Below the pieces are notes generated by a model. It was not told the DNA's origin and did no database searches. It saw nothing but the letters and a program-made list of their open reading frames with translations. From NCBI GenBank assembly GCA_002269645.1, contig NIVC01003828.1, positions 10,867 through 74,866 on the forward strand: a stretch of DNA of 64,000 bases. Reading direction: 5' to 3'. Positions 6,411 through 61,249 of this stretch are shown in pieces. Position 1 is the first letter of the stretch; each line of letters begins with the position of its first letter. The stretch is from Macrostomum lignano (taxonomy: Eukaryota). The translations under genes were made by a program, and so were the position numbers.

Positions 6411-6454
6411 GGCAATTTTCTTCAATTGCATCGCTGCCCCCTCCCTCATTTCAG

Positions 6455-7061: not shown

Positions 7062-7067
7062 GTGAGT

Positions 7068-41398: not shown

Positions 41399-41656
41399 CC
41401 AGTTAAAAGTAAAGCAAAAGCCGACAAGCAGGCAAGGATTTACGATACTGAAAAGGTGCCGCGGTATCTAAACTTCCTACTCGTTGAGACGAAGGATAAC
41501 CATCTATTTCCACGGCCACTAGTAAACTCTACAAACGGCAGTCCTGTGTTTTCAACGAAACAGAATCGCGGTGTAAACTATCTTGTTTGATTTATGCATA
41601 ACTTGAGCGAGAAGGCTGGTCTATCAAAGATGTATTCTAATCACAGCATCAAGTAA
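41399..41656 (+). mobile_element. Crypton-like tyrosine recombinase fragment
   Basis: ...RIYDTEKVPRYLNFLLVETKDNHLFPRPL...RGVNYLV*FMHNLSEKAGLSKMYSNHSIK*, with the YR box before H-x-x-R and one internal stop. Confidence 0.7.
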
Positions 41657-43140
41657 TATAAATTCTATTGATCTAAAAAATCTCTGTATCTTAGACAAAG
41701 CATGCTAACCTGATCCTTGTTCATATACCAATATGGATGGGCTGCTTAGGACAGAAATGAGCGAAACGGTCGAGGCGCGGAGCGCCGAGGCTGATTCACT
41801 TATTTCTGCCCGTAGCAACCTATCCATATTATTATGTAAAAGATGAAGCACGCTTTTCTGGGCACTATTTTTTCGAGTTGTATAATCTGGCCCCAAAGAA
41901 TGGCACCAGGGCAGACAGTGTACCCAGCAGGATCATCTCCAACTACGACTGGAAGCCCCCATCTGTGAGAGTCAAGGATGCACCCGAAGCCAACGCGATG
42001 TTTCTTCCCGATGTTACGGTTTAGAACCTCCGGGGCTCCGGCCAGTTTTGGGTTGCCGATCCGGAGACTGCAAACGGGCTGGGATCTCCGACCGGAGACT
42101 TTAAAGGGTGTAAGATCTCCTTCGGAGACTACAAACGGTTATGGGTCTCCGCGATAGGAGATCCGTAAAAACCGTTGTGGGATCTCTAGGGCATGGTCAG
42201 TTCTCCCCATCCGGAGATCCTAAACCAGATTCTGTTGTCCCCTCGGAGATTCTGCACCGTTTGCCATGTCGAAAATTATAATATTTAGCTTTTTATTGTA
42301 TATGGGAACCTTCTCTTAACCAACATCGTCAGTAATTTTTCCATTTCAAGGCATTTTCCAAATGAGGAAGTAGTTTTCTATGTAGCTCGCAAATTTCGCA
42401 GCCGTCATGCAGGGCCATGTCAGGGAAAAATAGCAAGCTTTGGTAAATAGGAGTAAATGTGTTGTCAGCACATTTTTTCGCAATACAATTGTAACAAAAA
42501 ACTGGAAATGCTCTTTTTCCCTCATACGCCTCTTTAAATTGCTTTTCTCTCTGGCGTTCAGTTCGACAAGGACTTGTGCGTGGTCATTGTTCAGTACATG
42601 GAGAATATTTGATTACAAAGTAGCCAAATTAGAAATTATTATTACTATTATTATTACTATTAGAAAGTAAGAAAATCACAAACTGAAAATGGCTCATCAT
42701 ATGCCTTCACTGCTTTTATACGAGCTACAATTTGCAATTTTTTCACTTTTCGCCCTCAATGGCTCATTCCTTCCGCCGTCAAATTACGCAATCAAATCAT
42801 TCGACTTACGAGTACGAGTACAGTACAGTACATACAAGACGACAAACAAGTCTAACCAAGCCTAAATTTAGCCTCACTTGATTGATGGGCTGTGTGACGG
42901 GGCGTATGAACTAAATAGATAAACTTATCGAAAAAGTTGCGCTAGCTAGGCTGCTCACATGCTGGGCTTTTTAAAATCAGAGAAATTTAATATAGCTTTT
43001 ATTTTCTAAGATAACAATACTCCGGAGAGTCTAGCATGGCGGTGATCTCTAACCTTATCTTATGTCGGGGTTTCTGATATCCATGCGGGCGATTGTAAAA
43101 TCGCGTAATTTTTCGTGTTGGATCTCCGGGCCGGAGATCC

Positions 43141-43578
43141 TTACACCGGGACTGAAGTGTTCGTGAAGCCAGCGAATGCTCGGTGCACGGAAGAGTGGCC
43201 ACGCGGCCAGGTGACGGGTCCAACCGGAGGCGTATCGGTGGAAGTCAACAGACTACTGCGCCATGTGGCTGACATCCGCCCCGTGCCTAGTACCCAGCCG
43301 CAGCCACCTGGAGTCGGCAGAGCGCAGGAGTGCGAACCTCGGAGGTCGAAGCGCAGGAGGTCGGCACCCCAGCGCTATATGCACCATCCTGACATGTGAT
43401 CTTGAGATCAGGGGGAAATATTGTACTTTAACTACTGTTGTCTTTGTTACACCGTTGCCGTTGCTTGTTGCCATAAACATCTTAGTTCTGTACTACGTTA
43501 AATTGAGCGTGCGCAGCGCAGCCTTCGCATTAAATAAACCTTCTGCTCTGCCAGCGCTCTGTAACTACACAAACTACA
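43141..43578 (+). mobile_element. Gypsy 3' end: integrase C-terminus, PPT and 157-bp 3' LTR
   Basis: VFVKPANARCTEEWPRGQVT...RHVADIR...RRSKRRRSAPQRY. PPT agggggaaa at 43410. LTR TGTAC(43422)...CTACA(43578) with AATAAA at 43533. Confidence 0.78.
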
Positions 43579-43762
43579 AAGGGCCGAGGGCGCCAAGTAA
43601 ATATTGCCCGGAAAATAGAGTGCTTTATCTCATATTGAGCATGTTGGGAGCCTCATAGATTTTCCGAGCATCAAGTAAATAGTGCCCGGAAAAAATTGAC
43701 TGCTGGGTGCAGCTTATGTCTATGGCCAAGTTCGAAGTTAACGAGTATGTACGAGTAAGCTA

Positions 43763-44791
43763 CACTTTTTTACTTCCAATTTTGAAAAACATGCTCTCAA
43801 ATATTGAGATCTTGGCATTCAATTTTGACAGTCTGTGGTATCGCTTATCGAAATGTTCAACCCATTTTGACAAACTCAGATGCAATAATCACAATTTTCA
43901 ATCGAAAATGACGAACTCCAAACTTTATTAAAAATTAGCTAGCAATTTTGACAGTGTGCATTCAATTTTGACGCTGGGGTAAAAAACAGTGCCTTTGTCC
44001 TGCCGTCTATGGAACATAACTTGCGTATGTGCATCAATTATTTGACAGAGTGCATCCAAAAGTGTCACATTGTATCAGTACAAATTGAAACATTATTTTG
44101 ATGTCTTATTACATTCTGTATGGCAGGTCTGCGAGTCAACTCCAAAGTTAGCGACGACAGGAGCCGGTTTATTGCTGCCTATGAGAATGGTGACGACTTT
44201 TTTTCACTTGGCTCGTGCTTTGGGGATCAAAGGAACCACAGCGTATGCAGTAGCAGTGTAGCAGTGGACGAGTATAAAGCTGCCAAAAGGAGGTCAGACA
44301 TTCAGACGAGTTGATCAGCTTCATGATCATGGGGTTCATGAAGAACTCGATTGATCCTTCATCTAGTCTTGCTATGGATGGGACCTGGGTTCGGCGAACA
44401 CTCTCCGGGGCGATTGGCCACGGCGAATTCTCGCCAGGTCAGTCAGGGCGCGTATGCCCGGCTAGGGTTCGGATTGGAGCTATAACTGTCACTTTTGAAT
44501 GCAGTCTGTCAAGAAAAGATGCACATATACAAGTTTTGTTCCATAGACGACAGGACAAAGGCACTGTTTTGTACCCCAGTGTCAAAATTGAATGCACACT
44601 GTCAAAATTGCTAGCAAATTGGTAATAAAGTTTGGAGTTTGTCATTTTCGATTGAAAATCGTCATTATTGCATCAGAGTTTGTCAAAATAAGTTGAAAAT
44701 TTCGATAAGCGATACCACAGACTGTCAAAATAGAATGCACAGATGTCAACATTGAGAGCATATACTTTTCAAAATCGAAAGTAAAAAGGTG
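43763..44791 (+). mobile_element. Tc1/IS630-like element with ~310-bp TIRs and an internally deleted transposase
   Basis: Arms 43763-~44070 and ~44485-44791 are reverse complements, with TA on both sides. The spacer encodes (one frameshift) MAGLRVNSKVSDDRSRFIAAYENGDDF/FHLARALGIKGTTAYAV, an HTH-like N-terminus. Confidence 0.75.
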
Positions 44792-45179
44792 TAGCGAGCT
44801 GAGATCATAAAAATATAGTCTGTGGGTTGCAGCTTATATGTCTATGGCCAAATCCGAAGTTGACCAGTACAAGTCAGCTAGCGAGTGAGCAAGCGCGCGA
44901 GTCTAAGTAAGATACTTTTTTATCTGCTCTGCGATGGAAGAGTCATATATAATAAATCTACTTGTTATACTATGGCGAAGACTGTTGGTGATTTTGATCC
45001 GAACTGACTGCGCCAATCTGACATCGATGCTGTCTTAGCTGTCGGTGGAGACCTTCGTAATCATCATGATATCTCAGCCGTCATGATGATTACGAAGACA
45101 TGATTGCGAATTCATGATGACTACTGGCAGCTACATGACAACAGCTACGTCGGAGGAGTCCGGAACGTCTCAATCGAAT

Positions 45180-45660
45180 TACTTCGGATCATCATTAACT
45201 TTCGAAGATGCCATGGCTCTTAACGACAGTAGGAAGTTATCAAAGACACTGGATAGAGACAAGTGGGCGAGTAAAGTGTTCACCGCCTGGATGGCTACCA
45301 GATTTCACCAACTTCCAGACACGGTTGGTGAACTGAGTCACGACCAGCTACGTGACTTGCTACCGCGATTCTTCCACGAAAATGGAGGAACGCTATCCCC
45401 TTGGATCAATTGTCTCCATCGCTGCTGGACTACAGCGTCAGGCCAGTGCTTGCAGTAAAAATCCACCTGCGGACTTCTTTTCGGGGTCAGGACTTCAAAG
45501 TTGTCACTGATTCGATTGATGCTGCTATGAAAATTTCTACTTCAAGTACCAAGGAGGGCAATGGACTAAAGCGCAAGAGTGCTGAAACGAATTAATTCGA
45601 AGAAGAGGCGCAACTTTGGGAGAAACAACTTGGTGACAACCAGCATGGCGTGGTGAAAAG
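45180..45660 (+). mobile_element. Crypton/DUF3504-type recombinase N-terminal fragment
   Basis: KTLDRDKWASKVFTAWM...LRDLLPRFFHE / ERYPLGSIVSIAAGLQR / FEEEAQLWEKQLGD across frameshifts. Confidence 0.68.
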
Positions 45661-46634
45661 AACAGTAACTGTTTTTGCCGCTTGTCGAGGAGCTCCTGCA
45701 TTGTGTTTGGGTGCTTGCTTTGCTAGCTGGCACATGGTTCATCCTAATTGACCATGGTAGGATGAGCGGCTTTTGTGTTGAAAAAACAATGAAGTTTTGG
45801 CGGCCTAATGCGCACTTCTATTTATTCATGAGCTGAATTCCCTTTTTCTGTCACCTATTCTACTGTGTTTTTCTGTTCGAATACAGTTCAATTATACACA
45901 GCTCGTTCTATCTATTAATAGTCAAGACTGCTTTATAAAAACTAATGCTTTTTGCGTTAGTTTGTGTTATCGATACAGAAATCATGATCTACGTTCGTGT
46001 TATACTATACTACGTATAAGATACAAATGTACTAACTACTTCAAATACTATTATTCGTTTTTAATATACGCAGGTGTACACTTGGTCCTGGTCCTATAAT
46101 TCTTGATCTGTGATGATTGCCATAGACATTGCCACCTAACCTATAGGAAAACAAGCAGCTTTCCAACGAAAACGGACGCGGCACGTTTTTGAGCCATGTC
46201 AGTCGGCAACGGGGGTATTAAATTCTGCAATCTACGATTGCCCTAGACACTAAGATTCGGTTCCGTCAATAACTATGATTATACCCCTTTTGGCCACGCC
46301 GAATAAGTCTATGGTCCAATGTAAGACCGGCCAAATAAACGATCCAAATAAAAAAAAATAAGATAAACGAATGAGCCACAAGAAAGTACTCAAAGAAATA
46401 CATGTACAAGCAACAAATTATACTGTTTTAGAAAGCGAGCAGTTGTTAACCAGTTTTTTGGCTTGACAGTTAAAAGTAAGTCAATAGGTAGTAACAGATC
46501 AACTCAATCAAAGTTGACAATCACCCCGCAAACTCCACATTGACCCCCCCCCCAAATCACAGAACTCACCAGTTGTTGTGAACATAACTACCAATCACGC
46601 CTTCAGACCAGAGTTTCTTTTCGGACGTCGGCTC

Positions 46635-46913
46635 TCATTGAATTCCCCGTCCTTCCAGAGGCTCCATGGCTTTCCGCATTGGTTGAACAAGTAGTATTGC
46701 AGCATGCTGAAAATAATCCTTCAACGTAGAAACACCATAGCGATCACCACGTTGATTCCGGATCTCAAAGATAAAACACTTGAGAATGTAGTTGAGATCG
46801 CGCTTGCTCAAACTCGGATAGTCGGTTGCGGTTGCCAATGGCAATTCACTTAAGACAGCTTCCACTTCAGCAAGACTAAGTGGTTTAAAGCTGACGCTAT
46901 TAACATCACTCAT
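46635..46913 (-). mobile_element. Crypton/DUF3504-type N-terminal fragment
   Basis: DLNYILKCFIFEIRNQRGDRYGVSTL matches the LN..L..F..E.R...G..Y...TL pattern. Confidence 0.65.
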
Positions 46914-47469
46914 GCAGCAAATAAATCGAAAATGTCACAGAAAAGGTTTATTAGAGACAGAGACAACTACTCACTTTTAAATACCCAACACAGTCGTTTT
47001 TGTGACGGGCATCAAACAATTTCTCTAGTTCAAATGTACAATGTTAATACGGCCAAACGGTGTATAAATAGAAATTATTTCCGTTTATTTTAGTCTATGG
47101 TCTGAAACATAAGCTTCGGACTCGCATCCAGGCCGAGGCGAAAAACGAGGTCCTCCTCTGCTTTTGTTTCAGACCAAAGAAATAAATAAATGGAAATAAC
47201 TTTCATTTAAACAACAACATCAACAGCAACACGAGGTGGTTGAAATCAACGTAGCAAGCAACAAAAACAAATTAACAAGAGTGAGTGAGAAAGGATACGA
47301 ATCTGATGCAATTTTTCTATGTCTAATTATTAATTACCACACTGCAATTGTTCAGATAGAAGTGGATTGCGATGTCACTGCTGCGTGATTGCTCATGAGC
47401 TGCACGTTGAATTTGGCAACCATCGATCACAGCGGAACATTCTTGAAGTTTCACGTCTTATTTTTCCGA

Positions 47470-47830
47470 CCATAGACTAAAATAAACGGAAATAATTTCT
47501 ATTGTCCGTTTGTACTGGCGCACACCGACCAAGCTCTTGTGGCCAGTTGTCTCCATGATTTGTTGTTCATCGAGTTCAGCATGGTACAATCTTGTGGCAC
47601 AAGTGGCTCCCAGGCTGTGATTCCGCCTATTTCCCTGGACACCCGATTCTTAACAGAGACGCTTCAACATGGTCGAAACGGTATTCTTACCAAGTGAACG
47701 CTTGTTGTACCAACATGTCTCAGTAATTAAGATTCCGCATTGCCTGCAGGTAAAAGCGACTGGTGTCTGTCGGGCGTAAGCTAAAAAACTTCATAACCGG
47801 CAGAAGACGGATGGCACGATTTCGTGCCAT
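47470..47830 (-). mobile_element. Crypton-like recombinase catalytic fragment fused to a CCATAGAC end
   Basis: RFYLQA / WYNKRSLGKNTVSTMLKRLC*ESGVQGNRRNHSLGATCATRLYHAELDEQQIMETTGHKSLVGVRQYKRT. R is replaced by G in H-x-x-R. Confidence 0.85.
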
Positions 47831-48237
47831 AAAGTAAGTATATAATCTCTCCCGTTCATTCATTTATCTGTGGCCGTCTGAACGACTAAGAGCTTGTTTC
47901 TCGGCCGAGGCGCAGCCGAGGCCTGAGAAACGAGTTTGAAGTCGTTCTGGCCATAGACAAATGAATAAACGGGAGAGATAGTATTTTTCCACAACTTGGC
48001 TCGGTCTTGTGGAAAAAAAGAACTATAGCTCAACAGTCTATGGTTCTGATCGAAACGGAACAGTCCCGAGTTTGATGCGATAGCGATAGTTTGATGCTGT
48101 GTTAGCAATTTAATTACAACGCTTGCGCACGAAATAGCTGAAGACATTAGTGACTTTGCCAGTATTGACGACGATATAGCGAGAATGGAGACACCCTCAA
48201 GCCCTCGCTTTTTGATTTTACGTCGGAAGAAGAGGTC

Positions 48238-48310
48238 ATGGCTGTTGTCGATGGCTGTGTGCCAGAAGCTACTAAGAAGAAAGCTACTTGGATGGTCAAC
48301 ACGTTCATCA
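48238..48310 (+). mobile_element. short Crypton-like N-terminal fragment
   Basis: VVDGCVPEATKKKATWMVNTF resembles the P..T.K.T.W....F motif. Confidence 0.45.
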
Positions 48311-48993
48311 TGCTGGAGGCGCTCCGACAACTGGGACTACGACGGTTGCCATTGTTCCTGATGCTGGAGGCGCTCCGACAACTGGGTCTACGACGGTTTC
48401 TACTGCTCCTGCGAAGAAAATGCGAATCGAAGTTTTTGGAAATGATAACACCGTCGTGCTCACTATGGAGTGAGAAAGACAAAAAGTGCTTTACTGTCAT
48501 CGACTATCAGTCCATTAGCGTTAGTGTCAACCATAGTTGCTTTTTGTGGCTTTTTTGTTGTTGTTGACAGTTCCAAATAAATCGTTTCTTCGTCCGGGAA
48601 AAATAAATAAATAGCGGGCATCGGGCAAAATTAAGGCCCATATATATCCCATAGACAAATGGTTGAAAAATAAAGCCCACACTTGACTAACTGCTTGGAA
48701 TAGCGGGCAATTTAAGGCTCACACCATGCTCTATTATGGCCAGCAACTATACTGGGCACGAAATGACGTTTCGCGCCCGCTGCATCTGTCAATGACAAAA
48801 ACGCCTTCACTTCTATAGATCAACTTCATTTCGCGCCCGCTGTCACTGTCTATGGTAAAAATTTATACGAAGGACACTATTTGTATATAGTAGCCTGTAT
48901 TTCTCGATTATTTCTCCATTTTCTCTACAGTATTTTTTTCGTTTTTGTATCATGTTGCGCTACGACAGAATACGCTAAAACGAAATTGGCGGT

Positions 48994-49830
48994 TTGACTG
49001 GCGATGAGTTGGATTTTGTCGCTCGTTTTGTAAACCGCGAGGATACCGTCCCAATCGGCCAATGGACAGGCCTTACTGAGAACCATGAACGCTTCAACGA
49101 CGAGGAACTCCGTGATCCAACCAACGCTGACATTTCTCTGTTGCGTGAGTTGACCTCTGAAGAACAATATCTTCTGCGACAGGTAGAGGAGGATAGCAAG
49201 CGAAAGTCTACCGCCAAGCAGACGGAACATCATATTCAAAGGTTTAAAAAGTTTCTGATGGAACAGGCAATGCCAACCGACATTGAGAGCATCTGATGCT
49301 GGTTCAAATTCTCTTTCGAACTGCATGATAGCCATTAGAAGTCCAGTTGGCGAAGCATCCAATTCGTTTGGGAACTGCAAGTTCGAAAACTGTACCTTAA
49401 CATCACCCTCAACAAGTGAGTGTCTGATCGAGCAGACTGAACTTTTAGCATGTTTGAGACAATGATGCGTCCCTTACTTCACTGTATACGTAAATAAGAG
49501 CTAAATAAGAGCCCACATTTCGTTTTAATCTGTTATTGCTGATTGACTTACAATTAATGACCGGCCTTTAATCAGAGGTCATTACTACGAAGTGACATTT
49601 TAATCAATGACCGCTGCCGTTTTTAATGTCTATGGCCAAGTTGAAGGGTTGAAGGGACGCGAAGGACCACCTTCTTATTTACAAGAATATGCGACCTTGA
49701 GGCTGCCGGGCACAGCATGTCCGACATCATGTCCATCACTGGAAAACTATCTGAAAGAACAACGCGCCGGTACCTGGCCAAGAGACGGGATCGACCATTG
49801 CAACAATCCAGTGCAGCCGTGGCGTCAGTG
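48994..49830 (+). mobile_element. internally deleted Crypton-like element (N-terminal piece 48994-49296, C-terminal piece ~49700-49830)
   Basis: KSTAKQTEHHIQRFKKFL and LEAAGHSMSDIMSITGKLSERTTRRYL. GTCTATGG motifs at 48848 and 49628. Confidence 0.6.
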
Positions 49831-51778
49831 CTTCAGCTACGAGTGGAAGATGAGAGTGCAGTTGCTCTGCAGCCTGGTGCCGCCCAGCGAACGGTTATTG
49901 ACGAGTCGGAAGTGGCGAGGGAGATCAGCGTCGGGTCGGGGCCCAAGCTTGTCGTTAAAAACTGAACGTTGCATGGTTGCACATTCAATTAAATAATTTT
50001 TTGAATCTGACAGAACTTATCACTGACTCACTCCACTGATACGAGTCGTGGCTACTGCAAAATGAATCAAGCTTTCTCGTTTTCATCCGTTTTATTGGTC
50101 CTTTTATTAAAATTTATGGTTTTTTTCCGTTTTGTAGTTATAAAGAGAAGCCATCTGTGTGTGACGGTGTGAGCTTTTGTAGATCGTTTTGTGAGCCGTC
50201 GTTGTGAAGCCTTTACAGAGTACATGTAATTATTGGTATTTAAGTATTCTATTTAATTGTACATCTGCACGTATTGTTTGACACGTTAAGTAGATTAAGT
50301 TCTTTGGATTTTTAAGATCTTTTACTACAACTTAAAATTACTACTAAAACGTTTTAAATTTGGTTCGCAGATTTTCGACAGTATTTTCGACAGCTCCCTG
50401 TAATTCGCCCAGTTACTTCTTCACTACGTGTAAATCCTGATAGACCGCTACACAACTCATCAACATTAGCAAAAGAAAAGTAGGTCTACAACTTCGTCAC
50501 ATGTGTAATAAATTCTGATTCAAAAGAATGGCCACCAATTGCATGGAGGTCACTGCATCAAACTAAAATTTTGGGCAATGACTACGCACAAATCCCTGTC
50601 GACTTGAACGTTAGAGAGAAAAGCAATTTTAACAGGTGCATCAGGGTAAGAGCAAACATTTTAGCATCCACGATGTAGAATTGTATTAAATAGTGAGAAA
50701 AAAGGAGGGCAGTAAGCGCAAGAAGCAAGGTGCTGTTTACTGAGCAAGAAGTGCAAGAAAAAGTTCTCTATTAGAATTGTAACGCAGAATCCTGAACTGA
50801 CAACACATTTAAACGTGTTTACCAACGCTTGCTATTTCTGCCCTGATATGGTGCGCGAAAGCTGCGAAATATGCGAGCTACCGTGAAAACTACTTTCCCA
50901 AGTGGAAAATGTCTTCAAATGGAAAAAAATATCTGACGTTGTTGGCCAAAGCACCATAAAGAATGGCGGGGATGCCGCTGCAGCCAAGACTGCTAAGCCC
51001 AATCGCTTCGCTGCGGCCGCTGCCGTTTAAACTATCACCTCTGATGGCATCATCATCGACGTCAAGCATCTCTTCGCCGAGGTGGCGTGTGCCAGCAGAA
51101 GCGAGAACATCCTCTTCCACCGCGGCCACCATCGCCGGTAGGTCTACATGCATGCATAAAGTACAAAATCGACTTAAAACTATTGTTTTGTGAATGTGAT
51201 ACAGCTTTAAGTATTGCGAAATATGGGCTGCATCTGTATGGCAACTTGTCAAAGTATAAATTACTATTACCAATCACAGACAAGGCTAAGCCAGCAGACT
51301 ATTCAATGGCTGTGGCTGCCTACGAGGCGACTATTCCGGTTTCGTAGAAACCGAAGTGCACGACATCGCGGCTCCTGACACCGGGCGTACCGCTGCACCC
51401 AGCAGTGCCCCTGTCTGCCAGTGTTACCGCTACCGCTGACGCGAGTCTCCGAGCCTTCCGTGCAATGTCCATATAGATGGTATATGTGCGAAACGCTTCG
51501 CAGATGAAGATGATGCTGGATAGCGCCTTGAGAAGGGGATACGCTACTCAGCTTGCGATTGGTAAGTAAAAACTCGCTGTGCCGCTTCTTTATGGGCGAT
51601 CTTGCAGCTGCAACGATAGACATCGATGATAGCTGCCTGTCTCGCAACGTCCTGCTCTACAGATGGGCCATGTCCTACCCGTTGGGCAGTGTGACCCCTC
51701 GGCCAGACGATTCACAGTTGGTCTGTGGCAACCCGCTGCTGATGCGACAGACTCGAGTATTTTTCCTCAGTACAGATA

Positions 51779-52159: not shown

Positions 52160-54379
52160 AGTGGCTCATGCACTGTCGTCAGAACGTGGACTCTTCTCCA
52201 AAGACTTAGAGCAGCGTTAATGCTGATGCACTTTATTGTTTTCTATATTGCCTTAAGGCTCAAACATGCTTTTAGGAAACAAACAAGAGAGCGGTGCTCT
52301 AAAATATACGAATGCCTGTAGAGAGATAGGACATAGACAAAAAGCGAAACTTGAAGGGAACGAGAGAGTCAGTAAGAGAATTAATAGTAGTACATCAATG
52401 CGCGCGTTGATAGGAGGCATTCTCTCAATGCACAACATATTCTTCGATGAGTTTCAGCAAGTACACGCGTCGTGGGGGCGCTGCAAAAGAACCCACAGCG
52501 GCAGACAGTCTGCACGCATCGATTGATTAGTCGAAACTGGAGGGCCGGCACAGAACCGAGTGGTGGTGGAGGCGCTACAGTCTTGCTGAGCCTGTCAGCG
52601 AGCAAGCGCATCCCCGTTTTGACCTCTTCTGGCAGACTATCATAGTATGTCGACTATCACAGCAAGCTGCATGCGGCTGAAGCTGCTGCTGACGACGGAA
52701 ACGATGAAAGTGTCGCCCGAACCAAACCGCGTCGGCAGCATCAGCAGCAGCGAAAGTTGTCATCTTTGGCAGCGTCTGCGGTGGTTGTGGCGGCTACGGT
52801 CAAAGCGGCGGCGGCGGTGGCGGCAGAGGTGACTGAGTTCGAAGCGGCAGCATTTAGTCAGCCTTTAAAGCAGCATCAGCAAAATGCTGCAGTAGACAAA
52901 CTGGACGCCGCGGTTTACGGCAAGGTGGCGGCCAAACAGCTAGCCATTTTGAAGATATGTTCTTCGACGAGGAGACCGGTATTCGCGACCGGCAGGACGC
53001 TGGTTTCCGAAAGGAATGGCAGTTTTACAATCTGGCGATGACGGCGTTGGCCAGAATGAACCCAAGCGCCGGCTTTCGCGATGCCTCATTCTGGTTGACG
53101 GATCTAAGGCAGGCTGCCAGAGGTCCGGTCCTCGTCAGAGAGCTTAGGAACGGCACGCATCCGGGCTGAGGCAATCGTCAAGTGCGTCAAATATATGCTC
53201 GATTATATAGACAACGACCCGGCGCGACTAGCAGCTGTCATTTCATCATTGTGCGTTGGGCCCGTGTTTGTGGGGGAAATCACGTGCACCCAGACCAGAC
53301 CCCTGCCTCCTCTGGACAAAACCCATGCGCCAGTTGCTAAAAAAGCAACAGAGCCACCAATGACTCGCAGCGGGGGATCTTGTTTTCGATGGTGCAATAT
53401 TTTTCTCTATATATGCGAGCCCCCTCATGCCTTGGTTCAGATCAGTTCAGTTCAGTTCGTTTCATTTCTTTATATTAAGACGCAGAGGGGAGGCCCCTTG
53501 CGCGCACGCGCTCGCAGAACAGGCGGGAGGGGCAGGCAGCAGCAGCCTGCGGGGTCAGCTAAAGCGCTTGCAAGTCAGCGATGAGGCAGTTCGTTAGAGT
53601 GGCAGAGCGGGCCTGGCCCCACGGCGCAATGCTCGGTTGGCCATTTCGATCATTTCTTTAGCTCTGTTCTCTCTCTCCAGTAAACGCAGTTCTGCAATTG
53701 CCCTATTTCTCCCATTGTCCTGACTCAGTTCTCATCCTAAACCAAGACCTCTGAGTCTGCTCTGAGGCTAACACCGTCCTCCCAGTCGACCCACTGAGCC
53801 CGACAGGATCTGCTGACTATTAGTCTGAAATCGCTAATCTGCCTGAAGTGCTGTGTTCGCTTGTCTTTGTTATTTCGTTCCGACGGGATCCTCACCTCAC
53901 CGAAGGCTGAGATCCGAAGGGACTGGTGGCAGCAACTACCAACGCTACTGATAAATAGATTCCTGAGAAAACCCAAGAGCTCCGTGCTAGCACAACTTGA
54001 GAACCACAGATACAACATAGGTGGCAGCCGTGAGATTTAAAGACCGATTTTAAAAACACTACTTGTGTCGACCATAGATCTTAGAACCAGTCAGCTGTTT
54101 AGGCTGTAGGGTTAGTGGGACTATAAATACATCGTAAATTCCTAGTTTTTTCCACGAGAAAAAACTTGAAAGGAACTGATTTAGACTTCCCTCGCGTTCA
54201 AGCGAAAACCACTAAAGTTGAAGCGGGATAAATATTTATAAACTCACCCAGCCAATATAATTAAAACGGGGACTACATCATGGATGAAGGAATAGAAAGG
54301 ATGGCTCATCTGAAAGTGAGTCTATGGCCAAGGCTTCCTAAAAATTGGGTTATTCCCCCATGAATTTCATTGGCTGCTT

Positions 54380-57300
54380 GAATTTAATAATCAAGTCATG
54401 ACACTTTTCCCCTCTCAGAAGAAGTCCGCTCCCTATCAATCACAGCTCCCGAGTTGCGAGTAGGTCAGCTTCTCAGGTGGCCGTCGCCGGCGTGCAGGCT
54501 GCAGTCCGCAGGGCGCGTCTGGCGGCTCCGGCTCCGGGTCCTCCGCGCCGGTCCCGGTCGAGTCCGCAGCCTCAGCTGCCTCGGTCCCGGCTGCTGGACC
54601 GTCAGGTTCGTCGCTCTCGACTCGCCGGCCCCGCAGTTGGTCGGCATGACGGCGCCAGGTCAGGCCGTCGCTCGTTTCGACTCGGAAGCTCAGCGGCCCA
54701 GTCTGCTCGAGAACTTTTGCTGGTTGCCAGGCCGCCGCATTAGGCCGGTAGTCCCTGGCCCAGGCCTCCGACCACGGCTCCTCCGGCAGCTCCCGCGACC
54801 GCCGGTCGTGCTGTCGTTTCTGGGCAGATTGCTCCCGCAGTACTCGATCCCGAGCTGACGGCCACAGCAGGTCCATTCGAGTCCGGAGCTGCCGCTTCAA
54901 GAAGAGCTCCGCTGGTGTCCGGCCGGTCGTTGGGTGCGGGCTAGCTCGGTAGCCCAGCAGCCAGTTGCACAGGCGGATGTGGAGGTCCGGCTGACTGCTC
55001 CGTGACGCCTCCATGGCCATCTTGAACGACTTCACCAGCCGTTCCACAAGTCCGTTGGTCTTGGCGTGATATGGACTGCTTCTTGTGTGGCGAATTCCAT
55101 TTGCTTTGCAGAAATCGCTAAATCCTTGGCTGATGAATGCTGGACCGTTGTCCGATGCCAGTTCTCTCGGCAGGCCCCATTGTGCAAACAACACTCGCAG
55201 CTTGCGAACCAGCTCGGCCGATTCGAGTGTTGACACGGCCTCCACATGCGGCCACTTTGAGTGCGCGTCGACTACGAGGAGAAACTGGCGGCCTCGAACC
55301 GGCCCGGCAAAGTCAACGTGGATGCGGTCCCAGGGCTGGTCTGGCCACACCCAGGGGTGCAGTGGAGCCAGCACCGGACGCAACTTAACGGATTGGCAGG
55401 CTTGGCAGCTGCTGGCAACCGACTCGATGTTAGCATCCATTCCTGGCCACCAGACGGAGGTTCTGGCGACACTTTTCATCCGGGCCATGCCGAAATGTTC
55501 CACGTGTAACTCGCGCAGAACTCCAGGTCGCAACGCTTCCGGAACCAGTACGCGAGTTCCCCAGATCACGCAGCCGTCTTCCACGCTTAGTTCTAGTCGA
55601 CGACGAAAGTAGGGCTTGAGCCGCGGCGGAACCAACTCTGGCCAGCCAGTCATCATCCGGAGAACATCTCGGAGCTCGTCATCTTGCTTCGTTGCTGCCG
55701 CTACATCCGCCGCCGTCAATGGGAACTCGCCCGTCAGCTGACAGACCCGATCGTCGTCGTCTGGGCTGTCGTCCTTCATCTGCAGGGGCAAGCGAGACAG
55801 GCCGTCTGCGTTGCTGTGCTGAGCAGTCTTGCGGAACCGGATGCTGTAGCTGTACCCTGACAGCAGCAGTGCCCATCTCTGAAGTCGCCCTGCTGCAGTC
55901 GGGGAGATGCCAACCTTCGGTCCGAAAATCGTCAACGGTTTGATGATTTGATGATCCGTAATTATCGTGAAGCTCCGGCCGAACAGGTACTGGTGGAACC
56001 GCTTGATAGCGAACACGATGGCGAGGCCTTCTTTCTCAATTTGCGAGTAATTTCGCTCCGCTGCTGACAGAGTCCTTGAAGCAAAAGTCACCGGCCGTTC
56101 CGAGCCGTCCTCCATCGTGTGGGACAGCACCGCGCCAATGCCTACCGATGAAGCATCCGCGGCCACCACCACTGGAAGCTGCTCGTTGAAATGCGTCAGC
56201 ACGCTGTCCGAACTCAGTTCTTGCTTAAGATGGTCCCAGGCTCGGTCCTCCGTCTCAGCCCACCGCCAGTCCGTCTCCTTCCTCAACAGTTGATACAGAG
56301 GAGCAGCGATCGTGGAGAAGTCTTGACATGTCGAGCATAGTAGTTTGCGAGGCCCAAGAATGATCGCAGCTCTGATACTGTCGCTGGCTTCGGGCTGTTG
56401 ACTATTGCTTCCACCTTCTGAGGTAGCTTCTTGACTCCGTCCTTGCTCAGCAACGAGCCCAGGTATTCGACTTCTTGCAGAAATTTGCACTTGATTCGCT
56501 TCAGCCGCAAGCCCGCCGCTCTCAGCCTGGTCGTACCTCGCGAAGCGCTGCTAGGTGCTCACTCATTGACGGACTGGAGACCAGGATGTCATCAATGCGG
56601 AAACAGACTCCCGGCACGCCCTTCAAAAGTGTTTCCATCAGCCTCTGGCAAATCGCAGGTGCCGAACTGACGCCAAATGGCAACCGGAGGTACTCGAAAA
56701 GCCCTTTATGCGTGTTGATGGTCGTCAGCTTGCAGCTCTCTTCGTCGAGTGGAAACTGAAGATAACATTGTGACAGATCGAGTTTTGAGAACAGCTGACC
56801 CTGTCCCACCTGCTCGTAAAGCTCTTCAGGCGTAGGCAGCGGGTATTGGTCGATGTGGAGCTGAGGGCTCAACGTCAGTTTATAGTCGCCGCACAGTCGG
56901 ACTGAGCCGTCCGCCTTGAGTACCGGAACCACTGGCGTAGCCCACTCGCTGTAGATCACCGGGCGGATGATGCCTTTGTTGAGCATGTCCTGGAGCTCGA
57001 GCTCCAGCTTGTCCCGCACTGCGAATGGCACGGGTCTGGCCTTGCAGAATCGAGGCTGTGCGTCACTTTTGAGTCTCAGTGCGACTGTCTGATCCTTCAA
57101 CTGCCCCAGGCTCTCGTCTAAAACATCAGCGAACTCCTCCAGCATTTGGTCGAGAGGCCCGCTGTTCTGCGCCGGCGCCTGGCTGATCTGGTTGGCAAAC
57201 AACTGAGTCCAGTTGAGTCGCACTTTTTCCAGCCAATTGCGTCCTAGCAATGGGCAGGCTCCGGTCTGACTGGTGACCACCAGCGGCAGCTTATCATGCT

Positions 57301-57960
57301 GTCTTCCGTCGTAGTTGACCCTGACCTCGGCTGTTCCCTTGACTTGTATTGGCTCGCCCGTCCAGGTCCGGAGTCGCAGGCATGTTAGTGTCAGCGGAGG
57401 TCGGCCGAGCTGCTTCCACACCGACTCCGGTACGAGGCTGACGCAGGCACCGGTGTCCAGCTGCATGGTGAGGGACTGGTCATTTATCAGCAGGCTTACG
57501 CTGATTTTCTTGGCCGATGCAGTGACTTGCGAAATCCAGCCAGTTGCTGCTTCCTCCTCCTCTTCCGTTTGCATTGCGTGCGCTGGTCCGTTCTCTGGCC
57601 GTCCGGCTTTCGTTGTACTGGAGGCTTTCTTGGCTGAGCGGAAAACTTTCTGCAGGTGTCCAACTTTCCCGCAGTTGTGGCACTTTGCGGTCCTGAAGTG
57701 GCAGGCTGCCGACAGGTGGCCTTTGAATCCGCACCTGTAGCACGCCTTAGAGTCTGGCGCTACCTGCTGGACTGAGCTGACCTCTGAGCTCGATTTCCAT
57801 TGCTCAGTTTCCGACTTTGCAATCTCCGCCGCGAGGGCAATTTTCTTGGCCGCATCCAGCGTGAGCTTCTCCTCCATCAGGAGTCGCTGCTGGGTCCGCT
57901 GGTCCCGAAGACCGCAGACGAAACAGTCTCGGAGAGCTTCTTCTCGAAACCCCCTGAACT
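54380..57960 (-). mobile_element. Ty3/Gypsy LTR retrotransposon (gag C-terminus, PR, RT, RNase H, IN), frameshifted and 5'-truncated
   Basis: Two CCHC knuckles, LDTGA protease, RT (LCGDYK, KLDL, LPFG, RIDD), RNase H (DASSVGIGAVL), integrase (HVDFAGP, SDNG, NGLVERLV). Frameshifts near 56520 and 56330. PPT gagaggggaaaag then TGT at 54403. Confidence 0.96.
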
Positions 57961-58039
57961 CGCACGAATTTACCAGAAGTAAATCTACTTTCGGATAATG
58001 CTTAAAAACGGAACTGAACTACGCTCGATAAGATATAAA

Positions 58040-59450: not shown

Positions 59451-59807
59451 AGATCCCAACTCTGAGTTAGCCCATAAACGACCAAGAGCTTCTGGTGCGC
59501 TGATTAGGAAGCCTTTAGGTATTCCCTCACAGATAAACTTGAAAATTGTAGAAATATTCGGTCACGTATTTTTACTCTTAACCATTAGCCTCCCGCGTCT
59601 ATTTTTGCTCACCCCATAGCCTCATGTAGCAGCTCTGCTGCTATAGATGTAAAAGCTGAAAAATTCTGCCAGATCAAGTTTTCACCCCACTCCCTCTCAT
59701 AGGGCTGTCAAAAAATGGAAACATTAGTAGGCATCAGTAGGAAGTAGTGTGATGGGGTGAAAATATCGTTAAATCCCTGCGAAGCTCTTTTCCGGGATGT
59801 ATTTTTA

Positions 59808-60497
59808 CCATAGACACAAAACACCGAGCTAGAATTTGTATTTTTCGGGTTGTATATTTTATATTTCATTCTGGATGACAAAAAACGAGATTATGAATAT
59901 AACTAACTGGAAAAAGAAAATTTTCGGGTCTTATTAGTAGGCAGCAAAGTAGCTTAGTTTACTTAGATTAGTTGGTTAGTTTCGGCTTAAGGTTAATCAG
60001 TTTTTAGTTACTAACAGTTGGGTTCATTGCATGCTTGTAATCAATTTTTGATGATGACTGAGCAGTTATTAAAACTGAAATTCAGCTGACGCTCACCGCG
60101 GACGCTAGCTGCGTCTGTCTCAGCCTCACGTAGTATTTTAGCGTCCAATACAGCGCAGGAATTGGCTATTTGAATGTCGGACGTCCGCTTGTACGTGCGG
60201 ACTCCAGCCAAACTTCGGTGGCCTGTTCGTTCCATTATTTGCTGTTCTTCAACGCCAGCTTGGTAAAGACGTGTAGCACACGTAGCGCGTAGACTATGAT
60301 TAGTCTTGTGGCCAGAAATCTCGGCTTCAGTGCACATTTCATGCAGAAACTTTGCCAGGGTGTTTTTGCCAATTGGACGATTCGAGGACGATTGTTATGG
60401 AGTGAGGCTTTCCAGCTATTTATCTGTCCTCTGTCTGTCTTTATAAAATATGTCTATGGTATAGAATACACCCCCAATACAGTATTGATGTCTATGG
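59808..60497 (-). mobile_element. Crypton-like element remnant with intact catalytic C-terminus, bracketed by CCATAGAC...GTCTATGG
   Basis: RPIGKNTLAKFLHEMCTEAEISGHKTNHSLRATCATRLYQAGVEEQQIMERTGHRSLAGVRTYKR (H-x-x-R, H, Y). Motifs at 59808, 60452 and 60490. Confidence 0.88.
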
Positions 60498-60581
60498 CCA
60501 ATTTGCGGGTTGTAATTACATACAACCCGGAGAATTTTTACTAGCTGTTATATAAATTAGCGGGTTGTATTTTTAGCGCAT

Positions 60582-60751
60582 GAATTTAAGTGAGATGACA
60601 CATAGAGTTGAGGGATGTATTTATTTAAGCCCCGAGGGCCGCAGGCTCGGGCCGCAGGCTCGGCCGCAGGGGCCGCAGGCTCGGCCGCAGGGGCCGCAGG
60701 CTCGGCCGCAGGAATTTAAGTGAGATGACACATAGAGTTGAGGGATGTATT
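60582..60751. repeat. 40-bp perfect direct repeat flanking a 90-bp GGCCGCAGGCTC array
   Basis: 60582-60621 is identical to 60712-60751. Confidence 0.9.
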
Positions 60752-61249
60752 ATCTTATACGTATAAGTTGCTTGCATTATAATTCTAGCTTCATACACAG
60801 CTGTGTATGGCTAGCAGATCGAGTTGTCGGAGTCTGCTAAAATAGCTACCAGCCACTTCCAGAAGCAGGCCAGGATTGGTGTGAGCGTGAGAGCTTTACA
60901 TCGACAAACCGAATTCAAAAGTTTTACCATAGACATGTATTGCCTCGTATATTCATCTTATTCACTGCGTATTGAAATGAGAAAAACATTGCAAGCATAG
61001 AGATCCAGACATCTCTATGCTCGACATAGACAATTTTTTTTTTTATCGCAGTCATGAATGCAATAGTTTTAATACGTTCTCTGCAAAGCTTGTGCGACTG
61101 GACAAACGCTAGAGCAGACAGGGCTGCTACGCAAATTAAAAAAGAAAGCTGCATTGAAGCAGCAGGTGTTGAACCCACCATTCAACACCTTTTCTAGGCG
61201 TGGGGATCTGCCTGCCGTGAGATAGTGGATCGGCGAGCTTAGCCTCTAG

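What the first reader, a model, noticed from the sequence alone, without database searches (positions are those of the whole stretch)
41399..60934. Crypton-like recombinase hotspot marked by a recurrent CCATAGAC/GTCTATGG end motif
Seen: at least 7 mutually different tyrosine-recombinase fragments in about 20 kb. I counted 28 exact copies of the 8-mer by eye (9344, 9402, 9425, 9461, 9470, 9551, 22253, 22389, 22604, 22719, 43718, 44005, 44541, 44840, 46120, 46307, 47093, 47470, 47951, 48036, 48649, 48848, 49628, 54320, 59808, 60452, 60490, 60927); about 2 are expected at uniform composition. It extends to GTCTATGGCCAA (6 copies) or GTCTATGGTAAAA (3 copies). It often brackets short units as CCATAGAC...GTCTATGG (46120-46314, 47951-48043, 48649-48855, 59808-60497). 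Known: Cryptons are eukaryotic YR DNA transposons, and as I recall TATGG termini were reported for oomycete/diatom CryptonS. Inference: several animal Crypton families share one terminal or target site and insert into or beside each other, forming a site-specific integration system with non-autonomous mini-elements.
Basis: partly seen in the sequence, partly recalled or inferred. Interest (0 to 1): 0.85.

Follow-up and report, generated by a model that had tools for sequence, protein, structure and literature searches.

The report
Shared 8-bp site among Crypton remnants
An exact 8-base word (GTCTATGG) is about 16 times too frequent in this animal DNA and clusters around broken copies of Crypton-type recombinase genes; it is most likely their shared recombination site, which has never been defined for animal Cryptons, but one window cannot prove it.

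Summary
There are 28 exact copies of CCATAGAC/GTCTATGG against 1.7 expected, and it is the commonest 8-mer outside the satellites. One-mismatch variants are not enriched. The copies fall in five clusters, in about 24 unrelated sequence contexts.

The recombinase fragments belong to the DUF3504 plus Phage_integrase family (CryptonA type). Only two are robust. One is weakly supported, three more are marginal, two are unverified, and none is intact.

The motif avoids the recombinase-coding stretches but is enriched in their flanks. All three C-terminal fragments are followed by GTCTATGG in the gene orientation, and three of four N-terminal candidates are preceded by it. One 1.13-kb unit is bounded by a 13-bp direct repeat, GTCTATGGTAAAA. 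Left and right arms are recombined at the motif more often than in controls.

- Eleven copies lie away from any recombinase remnant, including six within 215 bp.
- Fragment ends are no closer to motifs than random points.
- The flanks show no inverted-arm architecture.
- Ten loci of relatives from other animals lack the motif.
- The window's own genome could not be retrieved.

Verdict: probably a lineage-specific recombination or target core of CryptonA-type elements (about 0.5 confidence). That would be a new variant of what is known for CryptonS and CryptonF. A protein-binding or regulatory site is the main rival.

The parts
9344..9558 (.). Motif cluster 1: six exact copies in 215 bp (9344-, 9402-, 9425-, 9461-, 9470+, 9551+). 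It includes the perfect 19-bp palindrome AGTCTATGG-C-CCATAGACT at 9460-9478. The DNA is non-coding and has no recombinase remnant.
   Evidence: HMM search negative; DNA fold not significant (z -1.7)
22253..22726 (.). Motif cluster 2: four copies (22253+, 22389+, 22604+, 22719-). The copy at 22604 lies in a ~135-bp dispersed unit (22520-22654) that recurs at 54274-54404.
   Evidence: six-frame Pfam scan negative
43718..49635 (.). Motif cluster 3: 13 copies delimiting segments of 93 to 1288 bp. Most of the longer segments hold one recombinase fragment or candidate each, separated in four places by short spacers without one (195, 385, 93 and 207 bp).
54320..54327 (-). Single motif copy inside the 135-bp unit that abuts the 3' end (polypurine run) of a truncated Ty3/Gypsy element. 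A CCAAT box lies upstream and a TATA box 79 nt downstream in the CCATAGAC orientation.
59803..60934 (-). 1.13-kb unit bounded by the 13-bp direct repeat GTCTATGGTAAAA (60934-60922 and 59815-59803 in gene orientation). It contains a minisatellite, a hairpin (60506-60530), two inverted motif copies (60490, 60452), the fragment C3 and a 226-nt 3' region. It is a candidate internally deleted, non-autonomous Crypton.
   Evidence: TACAACCCG occurs exactly 4 times, all within 59846-60569
60041..60415 (-). C3: the best-preserved recombinase fragment (reference residues 337-441, plus its tail to the stop at 60041). The NHSLR box, the GHRS box and the catalytic Tyr are present; the N-terminal two thirds are missing.
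   Evidence: Pfam PF00589 E 2.3e-12; tblastn 9e-29; 66% identical to P0001
47494..47794 (-). C1: C-terminal recombinase fragment spread over three reading frames. The box I Arg is replaced (NHSLG). The reading frame runs through the motif copy at 47470 (..YKRTIEIISVYF-SLW-SEK-stop).
45126..45676 (+). N1: N-terminal half of a recombinase (reference residues 54-244), frameshifted. A GTCTATGG copy lies 279 nt upstream in the same orientation.
   Evidence: two collinear tblastn HSPs, E 0.002 each; no Pfam hit
46638..46934 (-). N2: N-terminal-domain fragment (weak QRICH1-type match).
   Evidence: Pfam PF25561 E 0.0022, below the curated cutoff
49645..49962 (+). C2: degenerate C-terminal recombinase fragment that begins 10 nt after the motif copy at 49628.
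   Evidence: hhalign E 0.037, in register with box II and the Tyr; phmmer E 0.009 in a 123-sequence database
41312..41647 (+). M1: possible middle portion of a recombinase. There is no motif within 2 kb.
   Evidence: weak only: phmmer E 0.12, hhalign E 0.2, HMM E 1.7
47061..47503 (.). Three copies of a ~50-nt '3'-end module' (YR reading-frame end + motif + last codons and stop): 47061-47114(+), 47160-47213(-, motif decayed to TTCTTTGG) and 47457-47503(-).
47840..47984 (.). Inverted pair of a related 3'-end module (..CCCGTTYATTCATTT + motif + CC): 47949-47984 holds an exact motif, and 47840-47875 a decayed one (ATCTGTGG).
43690..44869. Composite a-b-x-b'-a. A ~309-bp inverted repeat (43759-44067 / 44487-44795; the repeat finder core is 243 nt) carries one motif copy in each arm. 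It is flanked by a ~60-bp direct repeat that also carries the motif (43718, 44840).

Best explanation
GTCTATGG is the short recombination or target core used by a set of CryptonA-type (DUF3504 tyrosine-recombinase) DNA elements of this genome.

Proposed element layout: GTCTATGG, then roughly 120-280 nt, then the recombinase gene, then 0-230 nt, then GTCTATGG.

Proposed mechanism: an excised circle carries one core. It integrates by conservative strand exchange with an identical core in the chromosome, often one that belongs to an earlier insertion. Repeated integration builds nests. Deletion between direct cores and inversion between inverted cores then leave the observed array of truncated recombinase pieces and short non-coding units separated by exact cores in both orientations.

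Shown: the enrichment, the sharpness of the 8-mer, the co-localisation with Crypton-type fragments, the orientation pattern, one 13-bp terminal direct repeat, arm shuffling, and the absence of target-site duplications.

Inferred: that strand exchange happens in the 8-mer, that the elements were mobile, and that the copies away from recombinase remnants are free targets or remnants of non-autonomous elements. No intact recombinase is in the window, so any activity would depend on copies elsewhere in the genome.
For: 1. 28 copies against 1.7 expected, in five clusters. It is the top 8-mer in the window.
2. Eight bases are exact with no excess of one-mismatch variants. This fits a strand-exchange region, which needs identity between partners, better than a typical degenerate protein-binding site.
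3. The motif contains TATGG, the terminal direct repeat shared by about 60 CryptonS families (PMC3212892). The chance that an arbitrary 8-mer contains that 5-mer on either strand is about 0.8%.
4. The fragments are Crypton-type.
5. The motif is excluded from YR-coding stretches (0 of 28; p 0.006) but enriched within +/-300 bp (11 against 3.0 expected).
6. In gene orientation, all three C-terminal fragments are followed by GTCTATGG (17 nt, 226 nt and 4.4 kb downstream). Three of four N-terminal fragments or candidates are preceded by it.
7. The unit 59803-60934 has 13-bp direct terminal repeats. The third copy of that 13-mer lies 124 nt upstream of another (unverified) N-terminal candidate, in the same orientation.
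8. That unit also has a private subterminal repeat: TACAACCCG occurs 4 times there and nowhere else.
9. Arm shuffling. The right arm CCAAkTT.. is joined to three unrelated left arms. The left arm CCGTTTATT.. (the 3' end of the YR frame) is joined to different right arms. There are 6 one-sided pairs against a mean of 1.3 and a maximum of 4 in 60 shifted controls.
10. No target-site duplications flank the bracketed units (read).
11. An active CryptonF behaves this way. It ends in CACCG, targets CAYCG, and mediates inversions and translocations between copies and free targets (PMC9977147).
12. CryptonA copies are reported to sit in nested-insertion regions with undefined boundaries (PMC13465315).
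Against: 1. In the four clear homologous site pairs, and within each local group of 3'-module copies, the motif is internal to the homology rather than at its edge. In the C1-type module the homology runs about 14 nt past the motif, to the stop codon.
2. Ends of YR homology are no closer to motifs than random points in the dense region (p 0.5).
3. Eleven of 28 copies lie where no recombinase remnant can be found, including the densest cluster of six in 215 bp. Integration and excision do not readily produce cores 9-81 bp apart.
4. The flanks show no dyad symmetry, so the classical arm-spacer-arm core site is not seen.
5. Ten loci around relatives in other animals show no enrichment. The near-match 203 nt past the stop in the closest relative is within background.
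6. Only two fragments are robust, none is intact, and the orientation statistic is weak (6 of 7, p about 0.06).
7. No filled or empty site pair and no second genomic copy could be examined, because the window's genome is not in the searchable collections.
Confidence: 0.5

Rival explanations
1. The 8-mer is the binding site of a sequence-specific DNA-binding protein rather than a crossover point. The protein could be a host transcription factor or insulator protein, or a domesticated Crypton-derived protein. The non-coding parts of several repeat families and some free-standing clusters would carry the site as a cis-regulatory element.
For: - A homotypic cluster of six sites in 215 bp, with a back-to-back palindrome, lies in non-coding DNA away from any recombinase remnant.
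- One copy sits between a CCAAT box and a TATA box in a promoter-like unit next to the Gypsy polypurine run.
- The motif is internal to the clear homologous repeat pairs and is intact in all four of them, while neighbouring bases vary.
- It lies in non-coding flanks and never inside the recombinase-homologous stretches tested.
- It lies 124-279 nt upstream of three N-terminal fragments or candidates in sense orientation, where a promoter element would be.
Against: - There is no tolerance of variants: one-mismatch forms are at or below background, which is unusual for a transcription-factor site.
- A TATA box at a fixed distance is not general. Two TATA boxes explain all four hits.
- No copy lies near the one confirmed host gene, the KLF-type gene; there are none between 22.8 and 43.7 kb.
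- Decayed copies exist in dead modules (TTCTTTGG, ATCTGTGG), so there is no host-level constraint on those.
- It does not explain arm shuffling or the 13-bp direct repeats.
- No paper in the library links the word to a factor.
Confidence: 0.25
2. The motif is the conserved core of some other, unrecognised family of short non-autonomous repeats, or the preferred target of a different mobile element. It would merely share this transposon-rich region with decayed Crypton fragments.
For: - The region from 41 to 64 kb is a graveyard of mixed elements: Ty3/Gypsy, a weak endonuclease-RT (LINE-like) fragment and unclassified repeats.
- Three of the five clusters have no recombinase remnant.
- The motif occurs inside a 309-bp inverted repeat (243-nt core) and inside a 135-bp dispersed unit of unknown type.
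Against: - About 24 independent contexts share nothing but the 8-mer plus a few flanking preferences.
- There are no inverted terminal repeats beyond the 8 bp and no target-site duplications.
- In the C1-type module the motif sits inside the last codons of the recombinase reading frame itself. That ties at least this subset physically to the recombinase gene.
Confidence: 0.15
3. Chance, compositional bias or an assembly artefact.
For: None beyond the general repeat richness of the window.
Against: - 0 of 100 shuffles exceed 5 copies, against 28 observed.
- The copies lie outside the tandem arrays.
- Only 8 bases are shared, which is too short for an adaptor or linker.
- The similar word TGCTATGG (18 copies) was checked and is purely satellite-borne.
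Confidence: 0.01

Closest known systems
CryptonS elements of oomycetes and a diatom (Kojima & Jurka 2011, PMC3212892)
   Same: - Many different families, including non-autonomous ones of 465-1656 bp, share one short terminal direct repeat, TATGG, which is contained in GTCTATGG.
- The elements encode only a tyrosine recombinase.
- They have no inverted terminal repeats and no target-site duplications.
   Different: - The host is an animal.
- The recombinase here is the DUF3504/CryptonA type, not the CryptonS type with its own C-terminal domain.
- The conserved word is 8-9 bp rather than 5.
- Terminal position is not demonstrated here.
CryptonA elements of animals and Glomeromycota (PMC3212892; Glomhopper, PMC13465315)
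   Same: - The same recombinase family (PF12012 plus PF00589, with a QRICH1-type N-terminal domain).
- Small elements of 1.2-2.3 kb.
- Mostly truncated copies in nested-insertion regions.
- Non-autonomous derivatives are known in medaka.
   Different: No terminal repeat or target site has been found for any CryptonA family. All are listed as 'n.d.' in 2011, and the 2026 study found no detectable repeats. A shared 8-bp core would be new for this group.
CryptonF-1_cRei, an active Crypton of Chlamydomonas (PMC9977147)
   Same: - One terminus ends in a 5-bp word (CACCG) that matches the target (CAYCG).
- Excision is clean.
- The recombinase also drives inversions and translocations between copies and free target sites. 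That gives a mechanism for the scrambled, bidirectional array seen here.
   Different: It belongs to a different Crypton group in an algal host, and its activity was observed directly. Here there is only static sequence and no intact recombinase.
Classical tyrosine-recombinase core sites (loxP, FRT, lambda att cores)
   Same: The strand-exchange region is an asymmetric stretch of 6-8 bp that must be identical in both partners. That matches the length and sharpness of the motif.
   Different: Those sites have 11-13-bp inverted binding arms around the spacer. No dyad symmetry was found around the 28 copies.

Membership tests
Crypton (CryptonA group) | Encodes a tyrosine recombinase of the DUF3504/Phage_integrase type | tested here: met
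   C3 matches PF00589 at E 2.3e-12 and C1 at E 4.8e-5 (the latter below Pfam's cutoff). Relatives carry PF12012 plus PF00589, and their neighbouring ORFs carry PF25561 plus PF12012. The window holds fragments only.
Crypton (CryptonA group) | Intact catalytic residues (R-H-R-Y), indicating a functional recombinase | tested here: not met
   C3 keeps the box I His and Arg (NHSLR), the GHRS box and the Tyr, but lacks the N-terminal two thirds, including the first Arg. C1 has NHSLG (Arg lost) and frameshifts. There is no intact gene in the window.
Crypton (CryptonA group) | No other transposition enzyme (reverse transcriptase or DDE transposase) belongs to the element | tested here: inconclusive
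   The recombinase-bearing segments of 0.5-1.3 kb hold no other recognisable domain. However, the elements are fragmentary, and an unrelated Ty3/Gypsy lies between two of them.
Crypton (all groups) | Short direct repeats at both ends that match the target, without inverted terminal repeats or target-site duplications | tested here: inconclusive
   For: 13-bp direct repeats around the unit 59803-60934, the orientation pattern in 6 of 7 ends, no duplications, and arm shuffling. Against: the motif is internal to the homology in the clear repeat pairs, and fragment ends are not closer to motifs than chance.
Crypton (all groups) | Multiple dispersed copies, or polymorphic filled and empty sites (mobility) | not testable with these tools
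   The window's genome and its close relatives are absent from the collections (best Gypsy match about 50%, best recombinase match about 80% over half the query).
CryptonS | TATGG terminal direct repeats | tested here: inconclusive
   The motif contains TATGG (read directly from the sequence), but its terminal position is unproven.
CryptonS | CryptonS-type recombinase with its conserved C-terminal region, in a stramenopile host | tested here: not met
   The fragments are of the DUF3504/CryptonA type, and the window carries an animal KLF-type gene.
loxP/FRT-type core site | Inverted recombinase-binding arms flanking a 6-8-bp spacer | tested here: not met
   A dyad-symmetry scan over 48 arm and spacer placements was run. 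The only z above 2.4 is produced by the fixed bases themselves.
DIRS/Ngaro tyrosine-recombinase retrotransposons | Reverse transcriptase and RNase H in the same element, with split or inverted terminal repeats and an internal complementary region | tested here: not met
   The only RT and RNase H belong to a Ty3/Gypsy pol that has its own DDE integrase. According to PMC3212892, DIRS and Ngaro recombinases do not match DUF3504.
Invertible-segment system (shufflon-like) | An intact recombinase plus inverted sites that flank alternative gene segments of one expressed gene | tested here: not met
   Inverted sites are present, but there is no intact recombinase. The flanked pieces are decayed fragments of different genes carrying stops and frameshifts.
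Homotypic transcription-factor site cluster | Degenerate site variants, and a positional bias relative to promoters of host genes | tested here: inconclusive
   One dense cluster exists at 9344-9558. However, variants are not enriched, the TATA spacing is not general, and there is no site near the KLF-type gene.

The most novel reading that the evidence does not exclude
This animal genome holds a community of CryptonA-type tyrosine-recombinase elements that all use one exact 8-bp core, GTCTATGG. The core embeds the TATGG crossover of stramenopile CryptonS. That would be the first defined recombination or target site for animal Cryptons. It would also suggest either deep conservation or convergence of the crossover sequence between Crypton groups that were thought possibly unrelated. 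The free-standing clusters could be landing pads, or sites bound by a domesticated Crypton-derived protein.
Probability: 0.4. Interest if true: 0.65.

Novelty: new variant of a known kind. Interest (0 to 1): 0.5.

Why it matters
The ends and targets of animal Cryptons (CryptonA) have been undefined since 2011, and a 2026 study that applied many repeat finders again found none. Without ends, copies cannot be delimited, non-autonomous relatives cannot be recognised, and the transposition model cannot be tested.

An exact 8-bp core would make all three possible. Element boundaries could be annotated genome-wide. Filled and empty sites and circular junctions could be searched for. A small eukaryotic recombinase and site pair could be tested in vitro.

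The shared TATGG with stramenopile CryptonS would also bear on whether the Crypton groups have a common origin. Several vertebrate regulators (ZMYM2-4, QRICH1, KCTD1, KIAA1958) derive from these recombinases. Knowing the ancestral DNA site could therefore hint at what their DUF3504 domains once recognised.

Tried and rejected
1. Retrieving the same genome. Exact-protein look-ups of window ORFs failed. All three homology searches returned only distant relatives (recombinase up to 80% over half the query, KLF 41%, Gypsy pol about 50%). Cluster look-up gave no species names.
2. Cross-species test. Ten loci around recombinase relatives (L001-L010) show no motif enrichment. None has an over-represented word of its own that is not low-complexity.
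3. A recurrent breakpoint at L005:6925 looked like an element end. It proved to be a separate 570-bp insertion with CATCAC direct repeats.
4. TGCTATGG (18 copies) as a sister motif: rejected, because all copies are in two satellites.
5. RFX X-box reading of GTCTATGG(Y)AA: rejected, because the defining ..AAC half-site is not conserved (position counts).
6. Promoter reading. A TATA box about 80 nt downstream occurs at only two places, and a TATA box at -30 at three sites. The bacterial promoter and terminator scan is at background, as expected.
7. LTR reading of the 54320 copy. The homology with 22.5 kb spans only about 135 bp, and no LTR pair exists.
8. RNA genes: no Rfam family and no tRNA in the window.
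9. Hairpin or cruciform at the six-copy cluster: not significant.
10. Dyad arms: none.
11. A second co-occurring word: nothing survives multiple testing.
12. The copy at 48036 mapping to the GHR or NHSLR codons of a decayed recombinase: the alignments are too weak and disagree with each other.
13. My by-eye labels 'Acinus-like' (6371-7087) and 'mariner-like' (61694-62026) got no Pfam support.
14. Literature searches for the word itself returned only primer noise.

Full report

Yes for the motif. One hundred dinucleotide-preserving shuffles give 1.70 +/- 1.37, with a largest value of 5. After masking tandem arrays it is the single most frequent 8-mer in the window, ahead of poly-A words.

- The extended forms are as stated: CTATGGCCAA occurs 6 times and GTCTATGGTAAAA 3 times.
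- The conserved word is really 9 positions, W-GTCTATGG, in 26 of 28 copies. The bases after it show a weak Y-M-A-A preference.
- It is sharply defined. The 24 one-mismatch variants together occur 29 times, which is no excess.
- The copies form five clusters: 9344-9558 (6 copies), 22253-22726 (4), 43718-49635 (13), 54320 (1) and 59808-60934 (4).
- Self-comparison shows only four clearly homologous site pairs, so about 24 contexts are unrelated.

**2. What is around it?**

The window is animal DNA.
- It carries a KLF-type three-zinc-finger gene at 27054-28061(-) (Pfam). Its best full-length relatives, at about 41% identity, are from a hemichordate and a crinoid.
- Minisatellites are abundant between 4 and 37 kb.
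- From 41 to 64 kb there is a transposon-rich stretch. It includes a truncated Ty3/Gypsy element with protease, RT, RNase H and integrase domains at 54436-58018(-).
- There are no Rfam families and no tRNAs.

The recombinase fragments belong to the DUF3504 plus Phage_integrase family, i.e. CryptonA. The only named relatives are from Lottia and Mytilus. I mapped them against a 496-residue relative (L001) and a family profile.
- Robust: C1 (47494-47794, -) and C3 (60101-60415, -).
- Weak but collinear: N1.
- Marginal, none reaching a conventional threshold: N2, C2 and M1.
- Unverified: three further candidates.
- None is intact. C3 keeps the NHSLR box, the GHRS box and the catalytic Tyr but lacks its N-terminal two thirds. 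C1 has lost the box I arginine and is frameshifted.

So 'at least seven different fragments' is plausible, but only two are solid.

**3. How do the motif and the fragments relate?**

- No motif copy lies inside the recombinase-homologous stretches tested. Within the dense region, a permutation test gives p = 0.006.
- Eleven of 28 copies lie within +/-300 bp of a fragment, against 3.0 expected. The sites are clustered, so this p-value is optimistic.
- Between 44.8 and 54.3 kb, each longer inter-motif segment holds at most one fragment or candidate. In four places these segments are separated by short spacers of 195, 385, 93 and 207 bp.
- In gene orientation, all three C-terminal fragments are followed by GTCTATGG, at 17 nt, 226 nt and 4.4 kb. 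Three of four N-terminal fragments or candidates are preceded by it, 124-279 nt upstream. This fits the layout GTCTATGG-[gene]-GTCTATGG, although 6 of 7 gives only p of about 0.06.

The best-preserved case is 59803-60934.
- Read on the gene strand, it is bounded by the 13-bp direct repeat GTCTATGGTAAAA. That 13-mer has only three exact copies in the window. The third lies 124 nt upstream of another, unverified, N-terminal candidate in the same orientation.
- The unit has its own subterminal 9-mer, TACAACCCG. All four exact copies are inside the unit, against about 0.5 expected in the whole window. One pair forms a hairpin next to a motif copy.

In the C1-type family the motif lies in the last codons of the recombinase reading frame (..YKRT-IEIISVYF-SLW-SEK-stop). 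Related copies read it in a different frame, so the conservation is at the DNA level.

**4. Is the motif a junction?**

This is the crux, and the evidence is mixed.

Against:
- In the four clear homologous pairs the motif sits inside the homology. In the C1-type module the homology continues about 14 nt beyond it, to the stop codon.
- Ends of recombinase homology are no closer to motifs than random points in the dense region (p = 0.5).
- The compositional discontinuity at sites is marginal (p 0.035-0.11).

For:
- The two-sided pairs in the dense array are mostly local duplicates, 145-1100 bp apart. The exception is the 22604/54320 pair, about 32 kb apart.
- Between independent groups, the relationships are one-sided. 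The right arm CCAAkTT..G..GGTT is joined to three unrelated left arms (43718, 49628, 60490). The arm TAAAAAT.. is shared by 48848 and 59808, which have unrelated left arms. The left arm ..CCGTTTATT.. (the 3' end of the recombinase frame) is joined to different right arms.
- Counting such pairs gives 6, against a mean of 1.3 and a maximum of 4 in 60 controls in which every site was shifted by a fixed offset. Some pairs are not independent, so this is modest support.
- Site 49628 combines a 3'-end arm with a 5'-type arm, as a head-to-tail junction would.
- The bracketed units have no target-site duplications.

**5. Other tests**

- Classical recombinase core sites have inverted binding arms. None is detectable here.
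- Decayed copies of the motif exist in dead modules (TTCTTTGG at 47174, ATCTGTGG at 47866). So the sharpness does not come from host-level constraint on every copy.
- Eleven copies have no recombinase remnant nearby (profile search; six-frame Pfam at 22 kb).
- The densest cluster, six copies in 215 bp, includes the palindrome AGTCTATGG-C-CCATAGACT. An integration and excision cycle does not easily explain it, and it looks more like a cluster of protein-binding sites. Its DNA fold is not significant.
- One copy lies between a CCAAT box and a TATA box in a 135-bp dispersed unit next to the Gypsy polypurine run. Fixed spacing to a TATA box is not general.
- No second co-occurring word survives multiple testing.

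**6. Evidence from elsewhere**

The window's genome and its close relatives are not in the searchable collections.

Ten loci around recombinase relatives from other animals show no enrichment of the motif. The closest relative is L009, 66% identical to C3 with the same C-terminal tail. It has GTCTATGT 203 nt past its stop, where the window has GTCTATGG at 226 nt. Such one-mismatch words occur about once per 1.5 kb everywhere. The association is therefore lineage- or family-specific.

**7. Comparison with what is known**

- Kojima & Jurka (PMC3212892) list about 60 CryptonS families, including non-autonomous ones of 465-1656 bp, that share TATGG terminal direct repeats. They list 'n.d.' for every animal CryptonA and CryptonI family and state that no terminal repeats were found in animal Cryptons.
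- The 2026 Glomhopper study of CryptonA again found no boundaries or repeats. It notes that copies sit in nested-insertion regions (PMC13465315).
- Direct observation of an active CryptonF in Chlamydomonas shows a terminus CACCG, a target CAYCG and clean excision. It also shows recombinase-associated inversions and translocations between copies and free targets (PMC9977147).

That last behaviour, repeated at a shared core, would generate what is seen here: truncated gene pieces and short units separated by exact cores in both orientations.

**8. Verdict**

The motif enrichment is real and striking. The Crypton identity of the fragments is right.

The window supplies several independent but individually weak lines in its favour: co-localisation with exclusion from coding sequence, orientation, one 13-bp terminal repeat, arm shuffling, the embedded TATGG, and the exactness of eight bases. 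It also supplies real difficulties: the motif is internal in the clear repeat pairs, there are clusters without any recombinase remnant, there is no arm symmetry, and there is no cross-species support.

I put the recombination or target-core reading at about 0.5. A protein-binding or regulatory site stands at about 0.25, and an unrelated repeat core or target at about 0.15. The decisive tests need the whole genome, or a bench assay with an intact family member.

Noticed in passing
window 24450-24800 and 3860-4100: Two tandem satellites (units of ~39 bp and ~22 bp) carry, in every unit, a word that looks like an RFX X-box (GTTGCTATGGTAAC; GTTGCYATGG). They account for all 18 copies of TGCTATGG.
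   Followed up: partly
window 9460-9478: A perfect 19-bp palindrome, AGTCTATGG-C-CCATAGACT, lies at the centre of six motif copies (four in one orientation, then two in the other). The two right-hand copies are each followed by a similar ~30-nt stretch (..AGGCTTTCAAAAGCTA.. / ..AGCCTTCAAATAGCTTA..). A GTCTATAAAAAG TATA-like word lies 80 nt further on.
   Followed up: partly
window 22520-22654 and 54274-54404: A ~135-bp dispersed unit (about 90% identical, inverted) contains a near-palindromic CCAATGAAATTCATGG, a poly-G/C run of variable length and one motif copy. At 54.3 kb it directly follows the polypurine run at the 3' end of a Ty3/Gypsy pol, but it is not an LTR: no LTR pair exists in the window.
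   Followed up: partly
window 59846-60569: TACAACCCG occurs four times exactly, only here. One pair forms the hairpin CCGGGTTGTA-tgtaat-TACAACCCG, 8 nt from a motif copy. A GC-rich minisatellite at 60640-60710 is flanked by a 39-bp direct repeat (atacatccctcaactctatgtgtcatctcacttaaattc).
   Followed up: partly
window 60285-60300 (C3, gene strand): The codons for the conserved recombinase box I (AAT CAT AGT CTA CGC = N H S L R) resemble the motif on both strands (GTCTACGC and TCATAGTC, each 6 of 8). Recombinase genes of this family may therefore easily acquire internal pseudo-sites.
   Followed up: no
window 43690-44869: Composite structure a-b-x-b'-a. A ~309-bp inverted repeat (89% identical; the repeat finder core is 243 nt at 90%) surrounds about 420 bp and is flanked by a ~60-bp direct repeat. 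All four repeat arms carry a motif copy. Several internal short repeats (GCATTCAATTTTGACA) are present. The element type is unknown.
   Followed up: partly
window 42320-42589 and 50576-50945: An inverted pair of an unclassified repeat (77-82% identical) brackets the whole recombinase-rich array. It carries no motif copy, and one copy has a ~100-bp indel.
   Followed up: no
window 4000-37500: An unusually dense series of distinct minisatellites (units of 16, 20, 21, 23, 24, 28, 30, 35 and 52 bp, plus (GACA)n and (GA)n) surrounds the KLF-type gene. Strong GC and AT skews occur at 10-12, 16-18 and 28-30 kb.
   Followed up: no
L006:6925-7495 and L007:999-1338 versus L005:6925: In another animal genome, a ~570-bp insertion flanked by the direct repeat CATCAC lies 484 nt downstream of a CryptonA-type recombinase gene. 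The gene sits inside a tandemly duplicated cluster of class C (7tm_3) receptor genes. The insertion's ends behave like a Crypton-style or short-duplication insertion.
   Followed up: partly
window 6371-7087 (+) and 61694-62026 (-): Two ORFs that I labelled by eye as an Acinus-like RRM region and a mariner-like transposase N-terminus gave no Pfam match at E <= 0.01. The labels are unconfirmed.
   Followed up: partly
window 51000-54100: A GC-rich stretch (53-57%) lies between the recombinase array and the Gypsy element. It has several 90-175-residue ORFs on both strands and no Pfam match. Its nature is unknown.
   Followed up: no
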